64,000 nucleotides of DNA. Source: Octopus sinensis. Lineage: Eukaryota. Shown piece by piece: positions 14,509 through 56,261 of this stretch; positions within the stretch are counted from its first letter, which is position 1; the number at the start of each line of letters is the position of its first letter. Under the pieces are notes generated by a model. That model was given only the letters and a program-made list of their open reading frames with translations. It searched no databases and had not been told where the DNA came from. Location of the stretch: positions 93,186,001-93,250,000 of the forward strand of contig NC_043006.1 of the NCBI RefSeq assembly GCF_006345805.1, written 5' to 3'. A program made the position numbers and the translations under genes.

Positions 14509-16503
14509 CTGCTAACAGAACTATAACTTCATAGTTGCAACTCATTGAGTGAGTGTGTGAACGATAGGATCAACTGATTACAGAACTCGAAGACTTTTAG
14601 TAAACCCTGGAATCCGAAGTATATGGAGATGGTTTGTATTATTTTTAATTAGAAGCGTCGACACAAATTTCAATGAAAATTCGTCTCCAGTTTTAAATTG
14701 CACTGCCTAACTGAGTTCATAACTGGGGTCCAGAACTCTAGTGGGAAACAAAATCTCACCTGGACGAGACGCCAGTCTGTCGCAGGATGCTTATACGCAG
14801 CTGAGTGAGCGTAAAATAAACTGTTCTGCGCAGAAACACAACGCACCCATTGACCCAGGAATCGAAACCATGATCTTCCGGTTATGAGGGCAAAACTCTA
14901 ACGACTCAGACAGACGCATGCAGTCACTTAGAATCGGAAAAACTGCCTCGGTATGGCAATTTACTTTTTAAATGTCAATCCGTCAGTGTAAACCATAATC
15001 TTCTTGTGGTTAATAAAAATATATCAGTAAAAAAAAAAAAAAAAACGAAAATAGATTACTCACTCACAGAACTTTGAGACGTTGTTCTTATGAAAGAACT
15101 GATGATTTCAATAAAAAAAAATAGATGAATGAGTTACGATTTTATTTTATGGTCAGTTAAGGTACGTGGTTTGGATCTTGAGATGACGATCGTTTTATGC
15201 ACGTTCGATTCTCAGGCCGGTGGGTGTATTTCATCGTTCAGCAAAGAACTTCATTTCTGGCGCCCGTTCAAATAGAGGGCAACAATTTCAGTCATTTACC
15301 ATAAAACCCGGGTGACTAACCCTATGAACCCGAGGTTCACAGATATGAAAATATGTATTAGAAGCAGTCGGGTAGTGATTAATCCTGCGATGGACTAACA
15401 TTCTGTACAGGAACACTCTTGAAAACGTAAGCGCTGCAACGCCACGAAACATATGGTAAGCTCCGGCTTTGTGGGCCTCTTGATTGGAAATATTATAGTT
15501 AACATTAAGAAGATGAGGAATATCACCTTATGTAGATTTTAAAGTAGAAAGATGTTACAGAATTTTGTAAAAATCTTCTTTCCTGACAATTAACGTAAAA
15601 AGACAAAGTAGTCACCTCGTTTGCTTTCGTTCGAGGGATTTAGAAGGAAACCAAAAAATGAAGATGTGTTTTGATAGATGGTTTGATAAAAACTGTCCTT
15701 GTAGAAACGAAAACATTAAATAATCCTTAGAACAGCTGCGATGTTTCTAGAATATCTCATGACAATGCAAGGATAATCCCATTGACAACAAAAACAAAAA
15801 AAGAAGACTGCAACATCATTAACAAGACTGCAGGCGTTAACAGTGATATCGATAAAGCACTGGCAGCCATGAACAAAGAATTAGTTCTAAAGTTGGTAGA
15901 ATCTCTTGCTAGCATAGTAAAAAAAAGTCGAAGGTGCGTAGTGTGAGGGGGAGAGCATTACATGCAGGTTGTAATAGCGTGGTTTCGATTCTCAAACCTG
16001 GTGGTACGTTGTGTTCTTCAGTAAAATACTTCATCTCACATCGCTACAGTCCACTCAGCTGTAAATAAATAACCCTGTGACAGACTGGCGCTCGGTTCAA
16101 ATAGAGGGCCACAATTTCAGTCACTTACCATGAAACCCGGATAACTAACCCTATGAGCCCGAAGACTTTTCACAGTAAGTCTAGAGTATAATGATGATGA
16201 TGGTGACGTCCACGACGACGTCGTCTATAATAAAACAACGAACACTTGAACGAGAAAGCCTCGAAGAGGATGATGTATCCGAGAAGTAACAAAGTAACAG
16301 TCAAATCACCGTCAAACAGCCCCTTCACATATTAGAAAGAGTGAAAGCTAAATGTGATAACGCAGTCCTGGATATGATAAGCCTGAAAGAAAGTATAAAA
16401 AAAACAAGTGATAGTTACGGCAGGAAAATCTTTCGTCATGTACTTTCTGGAAAATACACAGTTCAATTTTTAAAAATGAACATTATAATTACTGGTATCT
16501 TAC

Positions 16504-17626
16504 TTGTGGAGTATATACTGTTGTCATATATTACTGTAGCGCCGTATGCGGCATTTAGAATTATATACATTTTTATATTCTCTGCGGTTATTTTTTGTCT
16601 TTTCTGAAGGTTATGTTCATTCCTCTTTTCCTTTTGTACGCTCACACCTCCCGGTATGTTAAAACCTGTTGAATTTCCTTCCGGTCTGGTGCATTTTGAT
16701 TTAGTTATATCATTTAACACGTTGACTGCCAACTACGAATTATCTCCTGGTTGGCAATCTATACAATTTTGCCAGGTATGAGCATACGCGTAGAGGCCTA
16801 TTTTATTGTAACACGCTTAAAATGAACTGGTGTCTGGAACTAACATTGTGAGTGTGTGGTGGAAGCATTAAAGACACCTTTTATTTGCCCAATCATACGA
16901 ATTAACTCGTATCATAGCACTTACCAGGAAATATATTTGGTAAACATCTATATATATCAGGTATAAGTATTAGATTTCGATGCAGTTGGTGCCGGAAAAC
17001 TTGGTGCAGTTGGTACAGGAGAACTACATTGTCTCTTACGACCTCGAGCAACTAATTGTTCATCTTCTTCAGTAGAACTGGTGTCACTGGTATTACTTCC
17101 ACTGGTATTTGCTACATAATTTTTATCCAAAGCATCTGAGTATTCACTCTCTGACTCTAAGACATCATCTTCCGCTAGTTTATTTTCCACGGGTTCCTGA
17201 AGCATTCCAGCAATTTTTTTCACTGGAAAGGCTTTTTGGCATCTTATATATTACAAATCAAATTTATAATAATTCTTTATAAATCTGAAAAGATAAAAAA
17301 AAAGCATTATACAATGAAGTGACATAGTCAAATAATGATTAACATACTCTTAAAGCCTTCGTAGCAAACCAATCTGAGCATTTTGCATTACTATGAGATA
17401 ACTTGTATCACGTCATTGTAGTGTAATTACAGGTATTATTTCAGCTTTCTGATTTGGGAAAGTTAAAAAAACCCTTTTGGCAAGGAGAAGCAGATCATAT
17501 CGATATCCTGTGGCAGACGACGTGTTAAATCATATTCTATAACACACTTTGAAATATAAGGTTTCTTCCATTTTTTTTTTGTTTTTATAATGGTTATTGT
17601 GATGTGAAATCTTCCTAAATATGACC
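16504..17626 (-). pseudogene. GAIN-like exon (312 nt when reconstituted) interrupted by a piggyBac
   Basis: Acceptor tttgatcttttactttccag, donor GTAAGA. Removing 16718-17524 and one TTAA gives a continuous 104-codon phase 1-1 exon: GSYLGRFHITI...EYDL|NDITKSKC...GFNIPGG...YDNSIYST. Confidence 0.65.
16718..17524 (-). mobile_element. Internally deleted piggyBac-family DNA transposon
   Basis: TTAA on both sides (16714-17, 17525-28). Imperfect TIRs cacgttgactgcca / cacgtcgtctgcca. An acidic Ser-rich transposase N-terminus (MPKSLSSEK..IAGMLQE...ESESEYSD) is preceded by a strong splice acceptor; the catalytic domain is absent. Confidence 0.8.
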
Positions 17627-20600
17627 CTGGAAAGTAAAAGATCAAATTTTGGATGTAAACACGACTGAGTGGCCAACAGTTTTTCTTTGCAGCTATGTTT
17701 TTCTTGTTTCTATTCTACTACAGTCTTAAGTTTGTTCAAGAGTAATACTAACAAGGCCATGGGTCATCTAAAAGCTTCTGAAAGGAATATAGTAAATAGA
17801 AATTGAAGGAAAGCTCATCAGTGGAACCATTTCTGTTCTGGGGTGGTAGGCATAATCCGGTTACCTATTTCATTAACAAGTTTTGTACGTTAATGCTTTA
17901 ATCCGTGTCCCATCTGATGTAAATATTCGGCCCAGGCCTTAGATCGAAAGCGAACGTATTCTCTTACTTTTACCAATCACTAAGTTCGAAGAAAATGTAA
18001 ATGGTAACACACTTCCTTATTTCGCTAAGAAAACAAGTAAATTTAAATTTGATTGTAAATGAAAATTATGAGAATTAGTTATTCCTTATAAAATTATCAT
18101 CGAAAGTCATCTTATGCCACAAAGTCGAAACTATCCTTTGGCAATTTATAATATATCAGGAAACAAAATATACGTGAGATAAGCCGTTCATTTTAGGTTG
18201 TATATCGGTCTCTTGGTATTTTTTCATTTTAGCTGGCAGAAAAATTAGTGTTCAAATGCTTCCGAGGTTAACGTTGCCTTTCTTCCCTCCAGGATCGTTA
18301 CAATAATGTACTATTGCGGTACTTAGATCGATGATAGTGACTAATCCCCTCAGGTCGAAATTGCTGGCCTTGTACTTAAATCAGAGAACCTGGCAAAGCA
18401 TCAGCGTGTTGGAGGAAATGTATATTGTAGCATTTGTTCCAACCGCTCGCGCTCTGATTTCAAATCCTGCGTGGGGTCAGTTATGACTGTGAACCTTTTT
18501 GGTTCGATAATATATAAGGTGTAAGTCATGCACTGGGGTCAACGATATCGACTAAAGCCCTCAGGTTCGGAAATTTTGGACCACTTGTACTCAAGTGGTA
18601 TTTATTTTATTGACTCCCGAATGCATGAAAGGCAAGGTCTACCTAGCCGGAATTTGAATTCAGAACGTAAAACGGACAAAATACTGCTGAGCATTTTGTC
18701 CGGGGTGCTAACAGTTCAGCCAAATCGCAACCACCTGCCCATCTGTATTACAGACAATTATTCTATTTTAAAGCGCGCGCAATTATTTCGGGGCGTTATA
18801 CACCTATTGGTTTCCAACTCGGATTTTTTAAACACTCGACGTCGGTAAAATAAAGTATAAATAAAGAACTAGATTTCATTTAAAAGAGTCCGTAACCCAA
18901 AGAAATGTGCTTTATTTTTCTATCCAATAGGCGCAAATCTCTGATATTTTGCAGGAAGGGGCGAGTCGATTATATCGACCGATCTGCTCGACTGGAACTT
19001 ATTTCATCCGACCGAAAAGGATCAAGAGCAAAGTCGACCTCGGTGGAATTTGAATTCAGAACATAAAACCGGAAGAAATGCAACTAAGCATTTTCTCGGA
19101 ATGCTAACGAATCTGCCGGCTGGTCATCATCAAACGAAAGGCAATCAGATAGCTTTATTTCAACACAACCTCATCTGTTAGAATTCTACAAGGTTTGATT
19201 TCAATTTTCATTACCTCTTCCACCCCTTTACAGTTATAATTCCCACAAACATGGACTCCGGTAGGATTTTATGAATTAGTATGGAGTAAGGTATGGCTCT
19301 GTTGTTTAAGGGTTCGCTTCTACACAGCGTTCTTTCAGCAACTGGAGCAATTGTCTTCTACCATATACGATTCCTTTCTATAAATAATTCATTCATCTGT
19401 TAGAGACCCGTCTGAAATTAGCAGCTAATCACTTAGCTTATTACAACTTGTGATATCTTTTATGTTCTACTTGTTTCAGTCATTGCACTGCGGTCAAGCT
19501 GGAGCACCAAGTTGAAGTGTTACTTTGAACGAATCGAAACCAGTACATATATTTTGAGTCTGGCACTTAAGGTATCGGATTCTTTTGCTGGACTGCTTGT
19601 AAGCAGTGACGTAAACAAACCAATACGACTGTCAAGTGGTGGTTGGGATAAAAAAGCAAACACAATGACACATGAGCATAGAAACACACACACGCACGTA
19701 CGTGAACGCACACACGTGAACACGCGCACATATATTTGCATAGATCCGACGGGTTTCCACAGTTTCCGTCTACGAAATTCACTTACAAAGCACACGATAG
19801 AACTGAACACGAGACCATGTAGTTAAAAAGCGAGCTTTAAATATGATAAATGATGTAGTATAATTGATTTATCTAAACTATTATAAACCACCTATCACTT
19901 CTGGTTCGCAGTTCAGCAAAGTAAAAGGAACCTACATTTGTCACTTTACGGTGAAGAGAACGTTACGTGGAAACCGGCTTTGTTTCACTCAATATTACCT
20001 ACGCAGTTTACATGTGTTATATAAATCTTGCAGGCAAAACGGCTTAGGCTATGTCATGTTCGCTGGTATCAGTATTATCTTCACTGCAAATATTCCATCA
20101 AAAGCCCTGCATGCCATAAGGATTTCATGCATTATCTTCTATCTTTTTCCCACATTCATCATTGACACCTAATCCTTAACAATCGTATTCAAATAACAGA
20201 ATCATATAATCCTTTCCGATCCCCTGCTTTCGTAACATTTTATATTACACTTCTTGCATTCTATAAACTCATTAAACATATCGTCAAATACGACCAAACA
20301 ACGCTGACTAAGATCCAATCGTCAACATTAAGATTTTCAATGTTGGTAATTCGGAACAAAATCTATATCTAATGAACATTTCCAATTATAATAATCTTAA
20401 TTACTACGCGTGCCATAATTTGGTATCCTCAATGTCAATTATTACACATTATACGTATATTTAATAATTCAGCCGTTTGATTTTGCGCTTCTAAGACGGG
20501 GCTGTCACTGATCTCCGAATTAAGTTAACATTCTGCAGACTTATAAAACTCGACTGTTGTGGTAATATCATATTCGTATGAACTGCTATAATTTGTCTGT

Positions 20601-31603: not shown

Positions 31604-33805
31604 CTGGAAAATGAAAACTACCAAAGATTCGCATTTACCCCACGCATCATAAAACCCATTTTCGAAATACAATATTTGTGCCATGCGTCTCATTGTAGTT
31701 TCAAATACTTCGCAATTTTATTCTGCTCTCTGTGCTAAAAACATTTGTTTCATATTTATACACTATTATTTATGATTCAGGCTCCTTTATTGCAATGTTT
31801 CGTTATGTATTTTGTTAAATCTCTGAAAAAGATTTAAGTCACGGAAAAAAGGCGGGCATTAAACACGTCTTTCTATTTTTAATTTCGATAAATATGAAAT
31901 ATCATATAAGATCTAACTTGATAGGAAAGTTTTGTGCGCCTCATTGTTTTCGTTTTCTCTTCTTAGTATTGCAAAGCTTATAAAAGAATAAACATGGGTT
32001 ATTTAGCAGTCTTCTGCTGCACATCTAGTCTAATTAACTGCGATATTCCTTCTCAGATAATATCTCTTATAGATGTAGTCTTATAAACTATAGAAATATA
32101 TGCAGTAGCGTTGAGGATATGGGTAAATAAAAATTTCTATCTGATTTATTTAGCCCGGTCTGTTACTTTGCCATATACCACACCTAACCCAGCTATAATG
32201 AACAAAGGGATTTGATGTATTCTAATCGACGCGAATTTAGCCTTTTTACTATACATCGATGTAACATTATTCTAGAGAATTAGTTTGTCGGAATAGTGCG
32301 TTTTGCTACAAGAAAGCATATCTGCTTATTGCATTAACTCTCCATATAGAAATATACTTAAATTTATCTTGGGTCAGTTGTGAATATCAATATTTATCTT
32401 CCATAAAAACGCTGGTCTATTCAGGGAAATTTGTAAATAACAACTATTAGAATCTACCAAAAAGGCGTTCATTCAAGTGTCCTCGCGTGAAAATGATCTA
32501 TAAAATAAGTTACATTAGTGGTGTACCGAACGAAATATATAAGAGATTCATAATTAATTAAAAATATAAGATATTCGTAATTAATATGCAGAGAAAGAAG
32601 ACAAAAAATCTTGTGGCATTTATAAATGTTTCTCGAAGAAAATGATGTGATTTCAAACAATTAAGATTTAATTTCAGGAAATTATTTTTTTGCAGAAGGC
32701 AAAACCTGATATTATTTAGGAAGCAGCGTTGCACATATGCATATAAATTGTCCCCTCACGTAGGTTAATTTTTTCTATAAATAGGTAAATGAAATTTTGT
32801 AAATCAATTCTCAATTTCTCCAAATTATCTTCCTTCTTTATTGAGAATCTTCAACAATTACCACCAGTTCTATTTTTTTTCTTTTCAGCTTAAAAGGAAA
32901 TTTCAATTAATTGAATATTTTATGTGCGTCATCCAGTACATTCCCATTTCGCCCTAACATATTTATTGAAATTCCTGCCCGTGACCTAATTTAGTTATGT
33001 TTTCTTTTTAATTAAAATCTGTCAGGTATATATCACTTCAAATATCGCAGCATTAAAATATATTCTACACATGATATAGTACCTCCCGGTGACAAATTAC
33101 TTTAGAGTATCTTTTATTTCTTTTCACTGATATTTCTATTAATTCATTTACAACTAAGCTGTGTAATAACAGGGAACTATCTTCAGTTATATTTCAGTTT
33201 ATAATTCATTTAATTGTGTTTCTCGGGAATATTGTTTCCGTACAGATAATGTTTTGTTGGGGATAACAAGGACATTTAATGCAGTATCATTATTCCAAAC
33301 CCTCAGCCAGCTCCTATCTGCCACCAACAGTTAAAAGAAGTTTACAATTAGAAATGAGAAGAATCGTTTCCATATTTTATTCTCGACAATTATATCGTAT
33401 CTAAGGGCTGTAGATTGTTAGAATCATTATTGACCCAGAAAAGATGTTTTGCAAAATTTGTTTCGGCATCCCGCTCAAGTTCATTTTGACAATCACCTTT
33501 CAGGAAATAATAAAACAAAATGGTCTTTAAGTACAAGAGTTGATATAATCAACTGTCCCTTCACCGACATTCCTGATGTCATTTCAATAAACAATATAAA
33601 ATAAGGCGGTGAGCTTGCAGAAACGTTAGCACACCGGGTTTAACGGTATTTCGTCTGTCTTCAAGTTCTGAGTCCAAATTCAGCGAAGGTCGACTTTGCC
33701 TTTCATTGTTTCGGGATCGAGAAATTAAGAACCAGTTGCGTACTGGGGTCGATATAATCAACTGAGGCCTTCCCTAAAAATTTCAGGCCTTGTGCCTAGA
33801 TTAGA

Positions 33806-41780: not shown

Positions 41781-43262
41781 GAGTTCCGTAATCTACATCA
41801 GTTCATTTTTTTCTCAACTATAACTTTAAACTTTATGCTCTCCAACGCCGTTGAATGTCCAACCACTACATCAAGCTGAAAATTGGGAGACATCAAACAA
41901 ATCGTCAGATTTCGCCAGAACACTGTGTATGTATCGTTCTAAACAGTTCTATTACAGTTCAAGGCCAGCAATTTTAAGTGAGGGGACATGTCGATTGAAT
42001 CGATTCCAGTACTCAGCTGGTATTTATTTTAAAGGCCACGAAAGCATGAATAACAAAATCAACCTCGTCTGAATTTGAACTCAGAACACAAAGACGGACG
42101 AAATGCCGCTAAGCATGTTGCCCGGCGTGCTAGCAATTCTGCCAGCTCACCCCGCCTTGCAAACCCTTCCAATATTAATTGTTTCCTATTTTATTATAAA
42201 ATGAATTTCATTATATTTCATTTACGTCATGAATAACAATATAATTTCTTCTATTTGTCAATATAAGCTTATTTTTACCACCTCTGTATATTCGAAGTAA
42301 TGTTTAGCATTGTCTTATATCCTGAGTTCAAAATTCCTCAGAGATCACCATTATGAAAATACAAAGAACTATTATTGCTCTAGTCGGAAATGGCATCTAC
42401 TTTAATCGAATTAATTGAGTATACAATCCGTGGCATATAACCGTTATTAGATTATGCATAGTTTCATGATAATGTTGTCTTACTACTTAAACAGCAATTT
42501 TATCACTACAAGGAGGCTGCAACTTCCTGTTTATATAAACAATTCTAAAACTCAACGCGCAATTACTATCGGTAAAAAGTTAAGGAAAAATACTTGGGAG
42601 TTTACTTGTTCAGTTTTTCTGAATACAACGAAGTAGATTTACTATATCAAAGTTATCTTCCCGAATTGCAGCTGACAAAGTTGAGTTTTAAAACTCAGAT
42701 ACATAACGCTCCTGTATGCAATCATGGTATTATATAATTACACATACCACACGCATATACATATGTATGAAAAATTTATGTGTGTGTGTATGTATGCGTG
42801 TATATATATAATTATAAATATATATATATATATACCCTCTTCACTCTCTCTTTTACTCTTTTAATTGTTTCAGTCATTTGACTGCGGCCAGTACAAATTC
42901 TATCTCTGACGGGGACATAAACACACCAGCATCGGTTGTCAAGCAATGCCAGGGGGACAAACACAGACACACAAACATACAGGCACAGACATATATATAT
43001 ATATATATACATATATACGACGGGCTTCTTTCAGTGTCCGTCTACCAAATCCACTCACAAGGCTTTGGTCGGCCCGAGGCTATAGTAGAAGACACTTGCC
43101 CAAGGTGCCACGCAGTGGGACTGAACCCTGAACCATGTGGTTGGTAAGCAAACTACTTACCACACAGCCACTCCTGTGCCTATATTTATATATATATATA
43201 TATACATCTGCATGCATATACATATATACACACACATCTATATATACATACATATATATATG

Positions 43263-49059: not shown

Positions 49060-52000
49060 TAATCCAAACATGAAAACACAAAGAGAAAACATAACAACGC
49101 GTATAACAAGTATAGTATTATTCGACGATCAGGAAAGAAGGAAAGAAGGAGGGTTTAACGTTTCGAGCGGAGCTCTTCGTCGGAAACATAGGAAAAGGAA
49201 AGCTCCAAAGAAGGGAAGACGGAGGGAAAAAATCGCCAACGGTACACACGCGGTCACATTTTGAATGACCGGAAGCGAATGGGTGAAGAAAAGTTCATTC
49301 AAAGACAGGAGAGTGCAAGAGGATGTATGTGTGTGTAAGTGTGGATATGTGCGTGCGCGCAGGTCTGCGTGTGCGTGTGTATGCATGTGTGCAATAATAA
49401 CACGTGTGTGTATGTGTGTGTGGTTGTGGATGTTAATCTATGTGGGTGGTAGGGCTTAGTATTGTTTAAGGTCAAGGAAGAATGAATTAGGAGTGGCTCT
49501 TGTGTCTATCTACCCATGTGGAAGAATGGTCAATGAAAGGTACTGGTAGTTTGAAGCATGTGTGTGTGTGTGCGTGTGTGTATATGTATGTGTGTGTTCG
49601 TGTGTGTATGCGTAGAGTTTGTGTGTGTGGCGAATAACTGTGCTTTACTTTGTGTATGTGTGCGTGTGTGCTTGTATGTGTGTATACATGTATGTATAAT
49701 TGTGTGCGTGTATGTATGAGTGTGTGCTGGGTGTATGGGATGTATGAGTGGGTTCATTTGTGTGTGTGTGCGTGGGTGTAGTTGTGTGTGCGTGCGTGTA
49801 GTTGTGTGTGCGTGTATGTGTGCATGTATATGTGTGTGTGGATGCGTATGTGGGTGTATATACGTGTGTCCGTGGGCTTGTGAGTGTTAGATGTGTGCGT
49901 TCGTGTGCGTGTGTGCGTGTGTGCGTGCGTATGTGTGCGCATGTTTGTGTGTGCGTGAGTGTGTGTGTTTGTGTCTATATGTGTATACGTATGTATATGT
50001 GTGTGCGCGCGTGTATGCATATATTGCGTGTATGTATATGTATAGGTGTATATGTGAATTTGTGTATGCGTGTGTGTGGGGGATGTAGGCGTAAGGTGCG
50101 TGCGTCTGCTTGTGTGCGTGTGTGTGCTTACGTGCGTGTGTGCGTGTATGTGCGTGTGTGTCTGTGCCCATGTGTGTATAATTGTGTGCGTATCTGTACG
50201 AGTATTGTTTATTGGAGGTATATGTGGGAATCTGTGCTGGTGTGTGTGTGTGTATGTACGTGTGTATATGTGTGTGTGCGTGTATTATTTGCGTATGTAT
50301 GTGGGTGTGTGCATGTGTGTATGTGCGTGCGTGTTTATATGTGTGTGTGAACGTGGAGATGTTTGTCAGGTTGTGTGCATTTTGTTGTATGTACGCGCGT
50401 GTGCTTGAATATGTGTGTGTACGTTTGTACGTGTGTGTGTCTAATGGTATGTGTGTCTGTATATGCGTGGGGTTGGGTGGGATAGGTTTCTGTGCATTCT
50501 TGTGTGTGTATGTGTACGTTTGTGTACGTGTCTGTGTGTACGCGCATATGTGTGTGCGCGCGTGGGTGTATGTGGGTGTATGTATATGTGCATGTATGTA
50601 TGTTGTATGTGTGCGGTGTGTGGTAGGTATCTGTGTGTTCGTGGATACGTGAGTATGTGTGTGTATGTGTTCGTCTATAAAACAATAATTTATAAACACA
50701 ATAAATTATAAACAATAAAAAAACAAAAATTATAAAAACAATAAAATCTAAGGAAGTTGATCCAATATAAAAGACGTAATTGCACGTAAGGAATGAATAA
50801 TGAAAAAACAGAAGAAAGAAGAAGTAAATTTGCTTGTTGCGGGAGGTGCAGAGGCAGTCACTAAGAGGAGGGGGCTGTGTTAAGTCCGTGCGGGATATTA
50901 GTCTGTAAATTGAATATATATCGCTGTTCCAAGTGAAGCCTGGATTATGGCGATCCATTGTGTAGGGCGAGACCAAACACAGAGATGTTACAGGGGGAAT
51001 GGTTGGCCAAGCGGAAGTGACGGGAGACGGGAGAGTTGGAACGTAACCGAATATCCCTTAGATGTTCGGTGAACCGGTCGGCCAGTCGGCGGCCCGTCTG
51101 ACCTACATAAAGCATCCCACAGAGGATGCATTTCATGCAGTAAATGAGGCCAGATGAAGTGCACGTAAAAGAATGTCTAATACGTACAGTTAGTTGGTTG
51201 GAGCCAGTGATCGAAGTGGTGTTGGTGATGAAGGGGCGGGTGTTGCAGCGGGATCTGGAGTACGGGAAGGATTTATGTGGGGCTGAGGGGGAAGAGGAGA
51301 AGGTGTTACGGACCAGGAGATCGCGTAGGTTCCGGGCTCGTTTGAATGAGGACAAGAGTGGGTTGGAGAAAATGGGGCGGGTGGTGGGATCGAGCTGAGG
51401 ACGTAGTATCTTCTGACGAAGGGGTGGAAAAGGAGGAGAAAGGGGGTGCGGTTAGGGGGTTGGTGAGAGGAAGGAGAAAGGGGTGTGGTGCGGTGGATTC
51501 GACGAGCGCGGGCAGGGGCGTTCTGGACCAGGGTTGGGGGTATTCTCGATGCCTGAACAGGTGGACCAGGTACTGTGACTGGGTTTCAAAATCCTGGTCA
51601 AGGCTGCACAAACGTCGGAGGCAGAGGAACTGGGAGTAGGTGATGGCCAGTTTGGTGTGGAAGGGATGGGAGGAGGAGAAGTTGAGGTAGAGGTGGGAAT
51701 CCGTGGGTTTGAAGAAGGCGGTGGTGGGGAGAGAGTGGGAGGGGTGGTCAATACTAAGAGAAATGTCGAGGAAATTAACAGAGGTGTCAGAGATAGTAGA
51801 AGTGAATTGGAGAGAAGGGTGGAAGTTAGAGAGGAAAGAGATGAAGTGGAAGAGTTGTTCGCGGGAGAGGGAAGTGGCACCTATACAGTCGTCTATGTAG
51901 CGACCGTATAGCTCTGGGGTCGGCCCCGAGAATTGGGAGAATGCTTCGGCCTCAGTGTAGCCAACAAAGAGGTTGGCGAAATTGGTGCCCATTCTCGTTC

Positions 52001-52110: not shown

Positions 52111-52889
52111 TCTATGTACTTCTTTGTTGGCTATATATATACATATATATATAATCGAGATCGATATAATCGACTTAATCCGTTTGTCCTTGTTTGTCCT
52201 CTCCGTGTTTAGCCCCTTGTGGGTAGTAAAGAAATAGGTATATCGTCTGTCTTCCGTTCTGAGTTCAAATTCCGCCGAGGTCGACTTTGCATTTCATCCT
52301 TTCGGGGTCGATAAATTAAGTACCAACTGCGTACTAGGGGCGATCTAATCGACTAGCCTCTCCCCTAAAATTTGTGGCCTTGAGCCTAGAGTAGAAAAAA
52401 TATTTTGGGCTATATTTCCCGGTCAGCCTATATTGCACGTATTGAGATATGGCGTTGCAGTTTAAACAAAAGCTCATAGATTTCTTATAAATTCAACTTT
52501 TCGTTTCCTATTTATCTCAAGACCTGAAGGTATAATTAGTATTGCATGCTCTCTAGTTGTAAAGTGTTCGTTGTAATCTCAGTTCAGCTTTTCTCTGGCG
52601 ATATCATTTTAGTAGATATTATTTCATCCTATACACAAATGACTTTACGTCATATTTGTCATGATAATGGGAGAGTGTTATTTTGCTTCAACTGCTCCCG
52701 AGTGATTGGACTGGTGTGTGTGTTTAGTGCAATAATTGTTTTCTAGAGGAATATTGAGTTTCCGGTACTTTCCAAGTAAAATACGAAAAGGTATCAAACC
52801 AAAGCGGGATCTCTGTGTATTTTTTCGATCTCCTTGGAATACCAACCAAATTTCCCTTCTTAATCTTTTAAGGAAAAGGGAGTGTACTC

Positions 52890-55299: not shown

Positions 55300-56261
55300 T
55301 AGAACTAAAAGATACCCTCATCACCAGGAACTACCCACCTTCACTTATTGACATATGCATTCAACGTACCCTTCAACTTAACATCCAGGAACTGAGACAT
55401 CCCAAATCAAAGAAAAATTTACGACCAAAAGCCTTACTATACATCTCCACACACAACCTTCTCAACAATGAAGCCTTCGGCACCATCCTCCAAAACATAC
55501 CCCTCCTAAAAAAAGACCACAGAATGAACACAATCCTCCAAACACACACGATCATAAAAAAGCAAGAGACAGCCTAAATCTATGAAAAGTCTCCTAACAC
55601 AAGCCCGAATACGCTCTTCAACACAGAAGCCGACAGTAAAAAATGTGGAAGACCCAATTGCGGGATATGCGATTATCTAATTGAGGGATCAGAGTTCTCC
55701 TTCAAACAGGGACAACGGTTTACAGTGAAAAGCAACTTCACATGTGCTTTGGAGAACCTGATATACACACTAACCTGCTCTGGCTGTCAAGAGCAGTACA
55801 TAGGCCAAACAAAAAATAGTTTGCGTAAAAGAATGGCCCTGCACAGATCCCAGATAAAAATTCCCCAAAACAGAAAAATAGCTTTCAGCCAACACATAGA
55901 TGCTTGCGCCAACAACAAAACACCAGGCTTCAGGATTTCCCCCCTCTACCAATTCAGGGACGATACAACCTCGAGACAACGAATAAGTAAAGAAACTCTC
56001 TTTATTACAAAATACAGGCCACTTCTTAACGGGTCTACGACAAACGATTTATACACCTCAGCTTTAGAATAACACAAATACACACGCAAATATTACATTC
56101 CAAAGAATCCATTACAAATCAGCCCCAATCACAGCTATAATCCATAACGTGCCAACTTCAAGTCATACAACACCTCACTACTTCCACTCACTCATATTCT
56201 CCCTTCTCTTTCTTCTTCTTCCTCTTCTTCTTCATCATCATCATTATCATCATCATCGTCG

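What the first reader, a model, noticed from the sequence alone, without database searches (positions are those of the whole stretch)
16504..17626. piggyBac inserted at a TTAA inside a coding exon, in exon-trap orientation
Seen: the 807-bp element with TTAA duplication splits the exon at GAT TTA A|AT GAT, and precise removal restores 104 open codons. Read-through into the element stops at 17463-65. The element is co-oriented with the host gene and carries a strong acceptor (ttttttttatcttttcag, 17285) before its ATG (17242), an internal GTAAGT donor (16924) and AATAAA signals (16880-85, 16802-07). Established: piggyBacs excise precisely and can act as exon traps (CSB-PGBD3). Inference: the insertion may have caused or followed the gene's death. 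The flanking exon halves have no stops, which suggests the insertion came early in the decay.
Basis: partly seen in the sequence, partly recalled or inferred. Interest (0 to 1): 0.7.

Follow-up and report, generated by a model that had tools for sequence, protein, structure and literature searches.

The report
Decayed piggyBac copy in non-coding octopus DNA
The 807-base insert is a real but ordinary broken copy of a piggyBac "jumping gene" in an octopus-type genome, and nothing beyond a chance-sized open reading frame suggests that it landed in a protein-coding exon or works as an exon trap.

Summary
An 807-bp element (16718-17524) is flanked by TTAA on both sides and ends in 14-nt inverted repeats (12/14 matching). 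Two longer relatives in the Octopus vulgaris genome (2.0 kb and 4.1 kb) match it from one TTAA to the other, sit in unrelated flanks, and carry decayed piggyBac transposase domains (PF13843). The window copy is therefore an internally deleted, non-autonomous piggyBac-like element. It keeps the ends, the 5' leader, about 80 codons of the transposase N-terminus and the 3' non-coding tail.

The interpretation does not hold. The frame restored by removing the element (146 stop-free codons) has no Pfam match, no homolog among 5.8 billion proteins, and no credible hit in a full HMMER scan of 1.84 billion representatives. It shows no significant codon periodicity. It is also no longer than chance allows: a trinucleotide-aware null gives about 17 open stretches of at least 104 codons per window, and 15% of the window's TTAA sites lie in one.

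The exon-trap signals are weak. GTAAGT is a private mutation of this copy, ATG 17242 is an out-of-frame 20-codon uORF, and all three frames close within 12 codons after the acceptor-like AG.

Verdict: an ordinary transposon insertion of low interest.

The parts
16714..16717 (.). TTAA target-site duplication. It is the left copy on the + strand and lies at the 3' side of the element in the element's own orientation.
   Evidence: Homology to the O. vulgaris copies L001 and L002 stops exactly here.
16718..16731 (-). 3' terminal inverted repeat, CACGTTGACTGCCA when read inward. It overlaps a subterminal palindrome at 16724-16759.
   Evidence: (I1, I21). It is conserved in L001 and L002. It fits the published piggyBac TIR start motif C[C/A/T][C/A/T][T/G/A][T/A/G][T/G/A] and the typical length of 14+/-2 bp (PMC5381638).
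16732..16964 (-). 3' non-coding tail of the piggyBac-like element. It carries two AATAAA motifs (16880-85, 16802-07) that are conserved in the family, and a GTAAGT (about 16924) that is private to this copy.
   Evidence: Alignment A1: blastn identity to the 3' ends of L001 and L002 is 89-91%. AATAAA is present in all three copies. GTAAGT is found only here; the others have CAGGTG.
16965..16967 (-). Internal-deletion junction with 3-nt microhomology (CTT on the minus strand). About 1.2 kb is missing relative to L001 and about 3.3 kb relative to L002, including the whole DDE domain.
   Evidence: blastn segment breaks; alignments A1 and A2.
16957..17223 (-). Truncated transposase N-terminal ORF of 88 codons, with its stop at 16957-59. 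It is an acidic, serine-rich N-terminus whose frame runs out just after the deletion junction.
   Evidence: It is 78% and 74% identical to the O. vulgaris hypothetical proteins P0001 and P0002. P0001 continues into the start of the piggyBac core. The ORF shows strong codon periodicity, p=2e-7.
17224..17510 (-). 5' leader of the element. It holds an acceptor-like polypyrimidine tract with its AG at 17285, an out-of-frame uORF starting at ATG 17242 (20 codons), and a 27-bp private deletion relative to the relatives.
   Evidence: Alignment A2. After the AG, stops appear in all three frames within 12 codons.
17511..17524 (-). 5' terminal inverted repeat, CACGTCGTCTGCCA.
   Evidence: The same end is seen in L001 (CACGTTGCCTGCCA).
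17525..17528 (.). TTAA target-site duplication, the right copy on the + strand.
16466..16717 (-). Downstream half (84 codons) of the stop-free frame that is restored when the element is removed. It is judged to be a chance open frame in A-rich non-coding DNA.
   Evidence: no homologs.
17529..17714 (-). Upstream half (62 codons) of the same stop-free frame.
   Evidence: There are no Pfam hits on the minus strand anywhere in 14600-19560.

Best explanation
An internally deleted, non-autonomous copy of an octopus piggyBac-like family inserted by cut-and-paste at a TTAA in unique, A/T-rich, non-coding DNA (intergenic or intronic). It duplicated the TTAA and has since decayed in place.

The copy keeps both 14-nt terminal repeats, so in principle a family transposase supplied in trans could still excise it. 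That is an inference. It encodes only about 80 residues of the transposase N-terminus and no catalytic domain. The deletion joined the N-terminal coding region to the 3' tail at a 3-nt microhomology, which is typical of abortive gap repair or end joining (inference).

The 104-146 codon frame that reappears when the element is removed is a chance open frame. The splice-like and poly(A)-like motifs are either family leader and tail sequence or private mutations. None of this shows an effect on a host gene.
For: The element is real and belongs to piggyBac.
- It has the TTAA duplication and 14-nt TIRs.
- Its ORF is 74-78% identical to two O. vulgaris proteins.
- Their loci hold copies whose homology to the window runs from one TTAA to the other, in unrelated flanks.
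- Those longer copies carry PF13843 DDE_Tnp_1_7 pieces, E = 7e-19 to 3e-10. The closest database proteins are named PGBD4-like.
- The TIR fits the published motif and length (PMC5381638).
- PiggyBac families are already catalogued in O. vulgaris (PMC13282606).

The copy is old. It has 5.5% private substitutions and differs from the other copies by 9-10% over 745 shared columns. One TIR pair shows 2 mismatches, and the leader has a 27-bp deletion.

The flanks are non-coding.
- There is no Pfam hit for the joined frame or for any minus-strand frame in 14600-19560.
- No protein scored E<=1 among 5.8e9 proteins, a set that returned annotated O. vulgaris proteins in another search.
- The HMMER scan of 1.84e9 representatives returned only a 36x tandem-repeat bacterial-type protein.
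- Codon periodicity is p=0.12, against 2e-7 for the element's own ORF.
- The window has 90 stop-free stretches of at least 104 codons and 30 of at least 146, and 15% and 6.7% of TTAA sites lie inside one.
- An order-3 Markov null gives 16.6 and 1.5 such stretches per window.
- The neighbourhood is full of SINEs, microsatellites, mariner and GIY-YIG (Penelope-type) remnants.
Against: A mononucleotide shuffle of the 438-nt frame never left it stop-free in 20,000 trials, so the frame is unusual under the simplest null model. An orphan or fast-evolving exon would also lack homologs. The periodicity test has little power, since several genuine decayed transposon ORFs in the window also fail it. No orthologous empty site or RNA data could be examined. 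The immediate flanks are unique within the window, so they are not explained as another repeat.
Confidence: 0.87

Rival explanations
1. The piggyBac copy landed in a coding exon (17626..16504, minus strand) of a host gene, killed it or followed its death, and sits in an orientation that lets it act as an exon or gene trap.
For: Removing the element restores a stop-free frame of 104 codons, or 146 codons from stop to stop. An AG preceded by a pyrimidine-rich stretch lies at 17627-28 and a GTAAGA at 16503 bounds the frame. The element and the frame share a strand. The family keeps a polypyrimidine-CAG and AATAAA motifs. A mononucleotide shuffle makes the open frame look unlikely.
Against: The joined frame has no homolog, domain or significant periodicity. 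Open frames of this size are expected by chance here. The + strand has its own 105-codon open stretch over the same DNA, at 16290-16604. No other exon-like domain hit occurs within 2-3 kb on either side on that strand. After the 17285 AG all three frames close within 12 codons, GTAAGT is a private mutation, and ATG 17242 is an out-of-frame uORF. Motifs of this kind are common: GTAAGT occurs once per 4.3 kb and AATAAA once per 0.8 kb.
Confidence: 0.05
2. The flanking open frame is a relic of an older, unrecognised coding sequence (an ancient transposon ORF or a taxon-restricted gene) into which the piggyBac copy nested. It has no present function.
For: The frame is the only long one at this spot that is not made of microsatellite. 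The window is a patchwork of transposon remnants, several of which also lack Pfam hits and periodicity.
Against: The flanks have no second copy in the window or in 24 kb of O. vulgaris sequence. Octopus transposon ORFs are often annotated as hypothetical proteins, yet no protein homolog turned up. Chance alone is sufficient.
Confidence: 0.07
3. There is no transposon here: the inverted repeats and TTAA pair are a chance arrangement in A/T-rich DNA.
For: TTAA is frequent, about once per 152 nt per strand. Short two-copy repeats are often chance.
Against: Two independent O. vulgaris copies share 82-91% identity over the whole interval. Their homology stops exactly at the TTAAs, the TIRs are the same, and a piggyBac transposase domain lies between them.
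Confidence: 0.01

Closest known systems
piggyBac-like elements (PBLE) and their internally deleted, non-autonomous derivatives, such as human MER85 derived from PGBD3
   Same: It has a TTAA target-site duplication. Its 14-nt TIRs start with C and fit the published motif. Longer relatives with the same ends encode a PF13843 (DDE_Tnp_1_7) transposase. The copy itself is an internal deletion that retains both ends, as MER85 does relative to PGBD3 (PMC2268245, PMC5381638).
   Different: The termini read CAC...GTG rather than the classic CCC...GGG of Trichoplusia ni piggyBac, though this is within the range reported in PMC5381638. At 807 bp it still carries about 80 transposase codons, so it is a deletion derivative rather than a miniature element. 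Whether this particular deletion form was ever amplified is unknown.
PiggyBac families catalogued in Octopus vulgaris (Genome Biol Evol 2026, PMC13282606)
   Same: The superfamily and host lineage are the same. The nearest relatives found are two copies on O. vulgaris chromosomes OX597821.1 and OX597822.1.
   Different: I could not check whether this family (TIR CACGTYGNCTGCCA) is one of the six PiggyBac families listed there. This copy is about 5% diverged and deleted, so it is not one of the 'recently active' insertions.
CSB-PGBD3 exon trap (PGBD3 in intron 5 of ERCC6; PMC2268245)
   Same: It is a piggyBac element with a pyrimidine-rich AG upstream of the transposase frame and AATAAA downstream.
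   Different: PGBD3 sits in an intron of a known gene, has an intact transposase ORF in frame with its 3' splice site, and has documented fusion transcripts. Here no host gene is evident, the ORF is an 88-codon stump, stops follow the AG in all frames, and nothing is known about transcripts.

Membership tests
piggyBac superfamily (non-autonomous deletion derivative) | Insertion at TTAA with duplication of the TTAA | tested here: met
   TTAA lies at 16714-17 and 17525-28, directly abutting the TIRs. The same is seen at both ends of L001 and at the 3' end of L002.
piggyBac superfamily (non-autonomous deletion derivative) | Short TIRs (12-19 bp) starting with C, with the motif C[C/A/T][C/A/T][T/G/A][T/A/G][T/G/A] | tested here: met
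   The 14-nt TIRs are CACGTT... and CACGTC..., matching at 12 of 14 positions. The motif comes from PMC5381638. The sixth base of one end (C) falls outside the motif.
piggyBac superfamily (non-autonomous deletion derivative) | Relatives with the same termini encode a piggyBac transposase (PF13843 / DDE_Tnp_1_7) | tested here: met
   ORF pieces between the ends of L001 and L002 hit PF13843 at E = 7e-19, 3e-10 and 1.5e-10, all above the curated cut-off. The best database relatives are named PGBD4. The window copy itself has no such domain.
piggyBac superfamily (non-autonomous deletion derivative) | Multiple dispersed copies whose similarity ends at the element boundary | tested here: met
   blastn matches to L001 run from query 301 to 1115, that is from TTAA to TTAA, and the flanks are unrelated. 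Only two other copies could be reached.
piggyBac superfamily (non-autonomous deletion derivative) | An intact autonomous partner in the same genome | tested here: inconclusive
   Only fragments were found: P0001 and P0002 (138 and 119 aa), and no hit longer than 225 aa. L001 and L002 are decayed. No whole-genome search was possible.
piggyBac superfamily (non-autonomous deletion derivative) | Precise excision or an empty-site allele | not testable with these tools
   No octopus genome or read collection can be searched by DNA here.
piggyBac exon trap (CSB-PGBD3 type) | Element lies within a transcribed host gene | tested here: not met
   No homolog or domain was found for the flanking frame or the 5-kb neighbourhood. 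Transcription itself could not be tested.
piggyBac exon trap (CSB-PGBD3 type) | 3' splice site immediately upstream of, and in frame with, an intact transposase ORF | tested here: not met
   The polypyrimidine-AG at 17285 is followed by stops in all three frames within 12 codons. The ORF is an 88-codon stump.
piggyBac exon trap (CSB-PGBD3 type) | Polyadenylation signal downstream of the ORF | tested here: met
   Two AATAAA motifs are conserved in all three copies. The motif occurs once per 821 nt in this window, so this is weak evidence.
piggyBac exon trap (CSB-PGBD3 type) | Host-exon-to-element fusion transcripts | not testable with these tools
   No RNA-seq data are available.
Protein-coding exon of a host gene | Homologous proteins or domains | tested here: not met
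   Pfam gave nothing. The 5.8e9-protein search gave nothing at E<=1. The single hit in the 1.84e9-representative HMMER scan is a tandem-repeat artefact.
Protein-coding exon of a host gene | Open frame longer than chance allows | tested here: not met
   The window has 90 stretches of at least 104 codons, and 15% of its TTAA sites lie in one. The order-3 Markov null gives 16.6 (>=104) and 1.5 (>=146) per window.
Protein-coding exon of a host gene | Three-base periodicity of composition | tested here: inconclusive
   chi2 p=0.12, against 2e-7 for the element's ORF. Some decayed transposon ORFs in the window also fail the test.
Protein-coding exon of a host gene | Frame conserved at orthologous sites; spliced transcripts | not testable with these tools
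   No cephalopod genome or transcriptome search is available.

The most novel reading that the evidence does not exclude
The flanking 104-146 codon frame could be an exon of a taxon-restricted, so far unannotated octopus gene. In that case the piggyBac copy split it, and the family's conserved polypyrimidine-AG plus AATAAA motifs would truncate the transcript. That would be a natural gene-trap allele in a cephalopod.
Probability: 0.04. Interest if true: 0.35.

Novelty: new member of a known kind. Interest (0 to 1): 0.1.

Why it matters
It matters little. This is one more decayed, internally deleted piggyBac-like copy in a cephalopod genome in which the piggyBac superfamily is already catalogued.

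There are two small practical points. First, two O. vulgaris 'hypothetical predicted proteins' (P0001 and P0002) are N-terminal fragments of this transposon family and could be re-labelled. Second, the family's ends (TTAA-CACGTYGNCTGCCA) and its 2-4 kb relatives give a handle for masking it or dating it.

Had the exon reading been true, it would have been a natural insertional gene knockout or gene trap in an octopus. The evidence does not support that.

Tried and rejected
1. Other copies in the window: none of either the TIR or the element.
2. Flanks as part of another repeat: the immediate flanks are unique. SINE-like repeats begin about 1 kb away.
3. Extended inverted repeat: it runs 7 nt beyond the TTAA (ATATCAT/ATCATAT), which raised the idea of wider element boundaries. 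I rejected this because L001 and L002 lose all similarity right at the TTAA, so the near-palindrome belongs to this target site.
4. HMMER hit P0003 (E=3e-37): rejected as an artefact. It is a 4106-aa protein made of 36 tandem repeats, and a weak 33-residue match was summed 36 times.
5. i.i.d. shuffle of the frame: it suggested significance, but this was superseded by the empirical counts and the order-3 Markov null. My first simple-repeat mask was far too broad (92% masked), so I discarded the figures that depended on it.
I redid the scan with X at stops, for the minus strand only. The three plus-strand frames of the neighbourhood were not scanned.
7. Search for an intact autonomous partner: only fragments were found.
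8. Not attempted:
- Exact-sequence look-ups of the flanking ORFs. The homology search would have listed them had they been in the collection.
- Structure prediction of the orphan frame. A single-sequence model would not discriminate.
- Scans of the prokaryotic, viral and metagenome DNA collections, which do not hold octopus genomes.

Full report
**What the window is.** The sequence is 30-40% G+C and crowded with microsatellites, SINE-like repeats and transposon remnants. The only close protein relatives of the element's ORF come from Octopus vulgaris. I infer that the window comes from an octopus, either O. vulgaris or a near relative. The exact species was not established.

**The observation.** TTAA lies at 16714-16717 and again at 17525-17528, with exactly 807 bp between them.
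- The interval begins CACGTTGACTGCCA and ends with the reverse complement of CACGTCGTCTGCCA. These are 14-nt inverted repeats matching at 12 of 14 positions.
- A TTAA+TIR pattern allowing three mismatches finds only these two sites in 64 kb, in inverted orientation, where 0.10 are expected by chance.
- Reading from the upstream flank into the element stops at 17463-65.
- The polypyrimidine-CAG (AG at 17285), GTAAGT (16924) and two AATAAA motifs are present.

**What the element is.** Its longest ORF (minus strand, 17223..16957, 88 codons) is 78% and 74% identical to two O. vulgaris 'hypothetical predicted proteins', P0001 and P0002. P0001 continues past the point where the window ORF ends.

I fetched their loci: L001 on OX597821.1 and L002 on OX597822.1.
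- blastn shows that the window element matches L001 in two blocks, running from the first TTAA to an internal point and from there to the second TTAA. L001 has about 1.2 kb extra between the blocks, and L002 has about 3.3 kb extra.
- L001 has TTAA-CACGTTGCCTGCCA...GGCAGAAAACGTG-TTAA in completely different flanks. L002 has the same 3' end but has lost its 5' tip.
- ORF pieces inside both longer copies hit Pfam PF13843 (DDE_Tnp_1_7, the piggyBac transposase domain) at E = 7e-19, 3e-10 and 1.5e-10.
- The closest database proteins to the L002 core piece are 'PiggyBac transposable element-derived protein 4' fragments from assorted animals.
- The TIR length and first bases fit the survey of 157 piggyBac-like elements: 14+/-2 bp, with the motif C[C/A/T][C/A/T][T/G/A][T/A/G][T/G/A] (PMC5381638).

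Membership of the piggyBac superfamily is therefore tested and met. The window copy is an internal-deletion derivative.

**Anatomy, in the element's own (minus-strand) orientation.**
- 5' TIR: 17524-17511.
- 5' leader: 17510-17224. It carries a private 27-bp deletion.
- N-terminal ORF stump: 17223-16957.
- Deletion junction: 16967-16965, at a CTT microhomology.
- 3' non-coding tail: 16964-16732.
- 3' TIR: 16731-16718.

Over 745 columns shared by the three copies, pairwise differences are 8-10% and this copy has 5.5% private substitutions. With the rate implied in PMC13282606 (Jukes-Cantor distance 0.09 is about 25 My), that is roughly 15 My. This is a rough inference, but the insertion is old rather than recent. 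The same paper lists PiggyBac among the catalogued superfamilies of O. vulgaris.

**Is the target a coding exon?** Every test I could run argues against it or is neutral.
- Pfam finds nothing in the 146-residue joined frame.
- The word-indexed search of 5.8 billion proteins returned annotated O. vulgaris proteins. For this frame it found nothing at E<=1.
- The exhaustive HMMER scan of 1.84 billion representatives returned one hit, a 4106-residue protein built of 36 tandem repeats. A weak 33-residue resemblance was summed over the repeats, so this is an artefact.
- None of the three minus-strand frames of 14600-19560 has a Pfam hit.
- The frame shows no significant three-base periodicity (p=0.12). 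The element's own short ORF gives p=2e-7. The test is weak, because some decayed transposon ORFs in the window also fail it.
- The frame length is unremarkable here. With the element removed, the window has 90 stop-free stretches of at least 104 codons and 30 of at least 146. 36% of all positions and 15% of all TTAA sites lie in a stretch of at least 104 codons.
- Sequences simulated from an order-3 Markov model of the non-tandem-repeat part of the window give on average 16.6 (>=104) and 1.5 (>=146) such stretches, with at least one of >=146 codons in 83% of simulations.
- The plus strand has its own 105-codon open stretch over the same DNA.

A mononucleotide shuffle did make the frame look improbable. 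That null ignores the genome's trinucleotide make-up, so I give it little weight.

**Is it an exon trap?** Newman et al. (PMC2268245) describe piggyBac as a natural 3'-terminal exon trap. In their account an intact transposase ORF has a 3' splice site immediately upstream and a poly(A) signal downstream, and PGBD3 sits in intron 5 of CSB.
- In this family, a polypyrimidine-CAG about 60 nt upstream of the ORF and two AATAAA motifs are conserved in all three copies. The general resemblance is therefore real.
- After the AG at 17285, all three frames reach a stop within 12 codons.
- ATG 17242 opens an out-of-frame 20-codon uORF.
- The ORF is an 88-codon stump without a catalytic domain.
- The GTAAGT 'donor' arose by two private substitutions from the family's CAGGTG.
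- Motifs of this kind are frequent in the window: GTAAGT about once per 4.3 kb and AATAAA once per 0.8 kb of single strand.

Without a host gene there is nothing to trap. At most the copy could truncate a transcript that ran through it.

**Verdict.** The element is real and correctly named. The exon and exon-trap story is not supported. The most likely account is an old, internally deleted piggyBac-like copy in non-coding DNA (confidence about 0.87). The remaining probability goes mainly to an orphan or relic coding sequence in the flanks. That can be settled by searching cephalopod genomes for the empty site and RNA-seq for junction reads, neither of which these tools can reach.

Noticed in passing
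L001:5983-6417 and L002:6001-6360 (O. vulgaris OX597821.1, OX597822.1): Two O. vulgaris proteins annotated as 'Hypothetical predicted protein' (P0001, P0002) are N-terminal fragments of decayed piggyBac-like transposases. They lie inside TTAA-bounded elements, so they are transposon remnants rather than host genes.
   Followed up: yes
L002:6787-7014: The 4.1-kb O. vulgaris copy is interrupted by an apparent SINE: its translation contains ...[19 protein letters not shown]..., and similar translations occur in the window. It has also lost its 5' TIR. This shows nested decay of the family.
   Followed up: partly
window:50945-52025 (-) and 55725-56072 (+): ORFs with GIY-YIG nuclease domains (PF01541: E=5e-6, above the cut-off, at 55725-56072; weaker and below the cut-off at 50945-51355). 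The one at 50945-51355 lies next to a 239-codon ORF that gave no Pfam hit. I suspect remnants of Penelope-like retroelements.
   Followed up: partly
window:10532-10900 (-): Mariner/Mos1-type transposase remnant (HTH_48, PF17906, E=7e-14).
   Followed up: partly
window:43135-43797 (+): A 220-codon ORF. Its first part is microsatellite-derived, and its C-terminal part has C2H2 zinc-finger-like matches (several weak Pfam hits, the best being Zn_SUZ12 at 29.4 bits, just above its cut-off of 28). Its origin is unclear; it could be a transposon ORF or a gene fragment.
   Followed up: partly
window:12334-12700; also about 18590-18730, 18960-19120, 42009-42147, 52238-52364, 33646-33798: A 184-bp unit present as a tandem pair, with dispersed 70-80% identical copies through the window and in both O. 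vulgaris loci. It behaves like a SINE family.
   Followed up: partly
window:48000-52000: Strong strand asymmetry (GC skew up to +0.50, G+C 48%). It is caused by a kilobase-scale degenerate (TG/GTGC)n tract at 49559-50350, which produces many long spurious ORFs on both strands.
   Followed up: no
window:15257-15333 and 16085-16162: Two 78-bp segments that are 90% identical and about 830 bp apart, just downstream (on the minus strand) of the insertion site. This is an unclassified short repeat.
   Followed up: no
window:16707-16717 and 17525-17535: The target site itself is nearly palindromic around the TTAA (ATATCAT-TTAA-ATCATAT, 6 of 7 complementary). The flanks of L001 do not share this, so it is a property of this A/T-rich site and not of the element.
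   Followed up: yes
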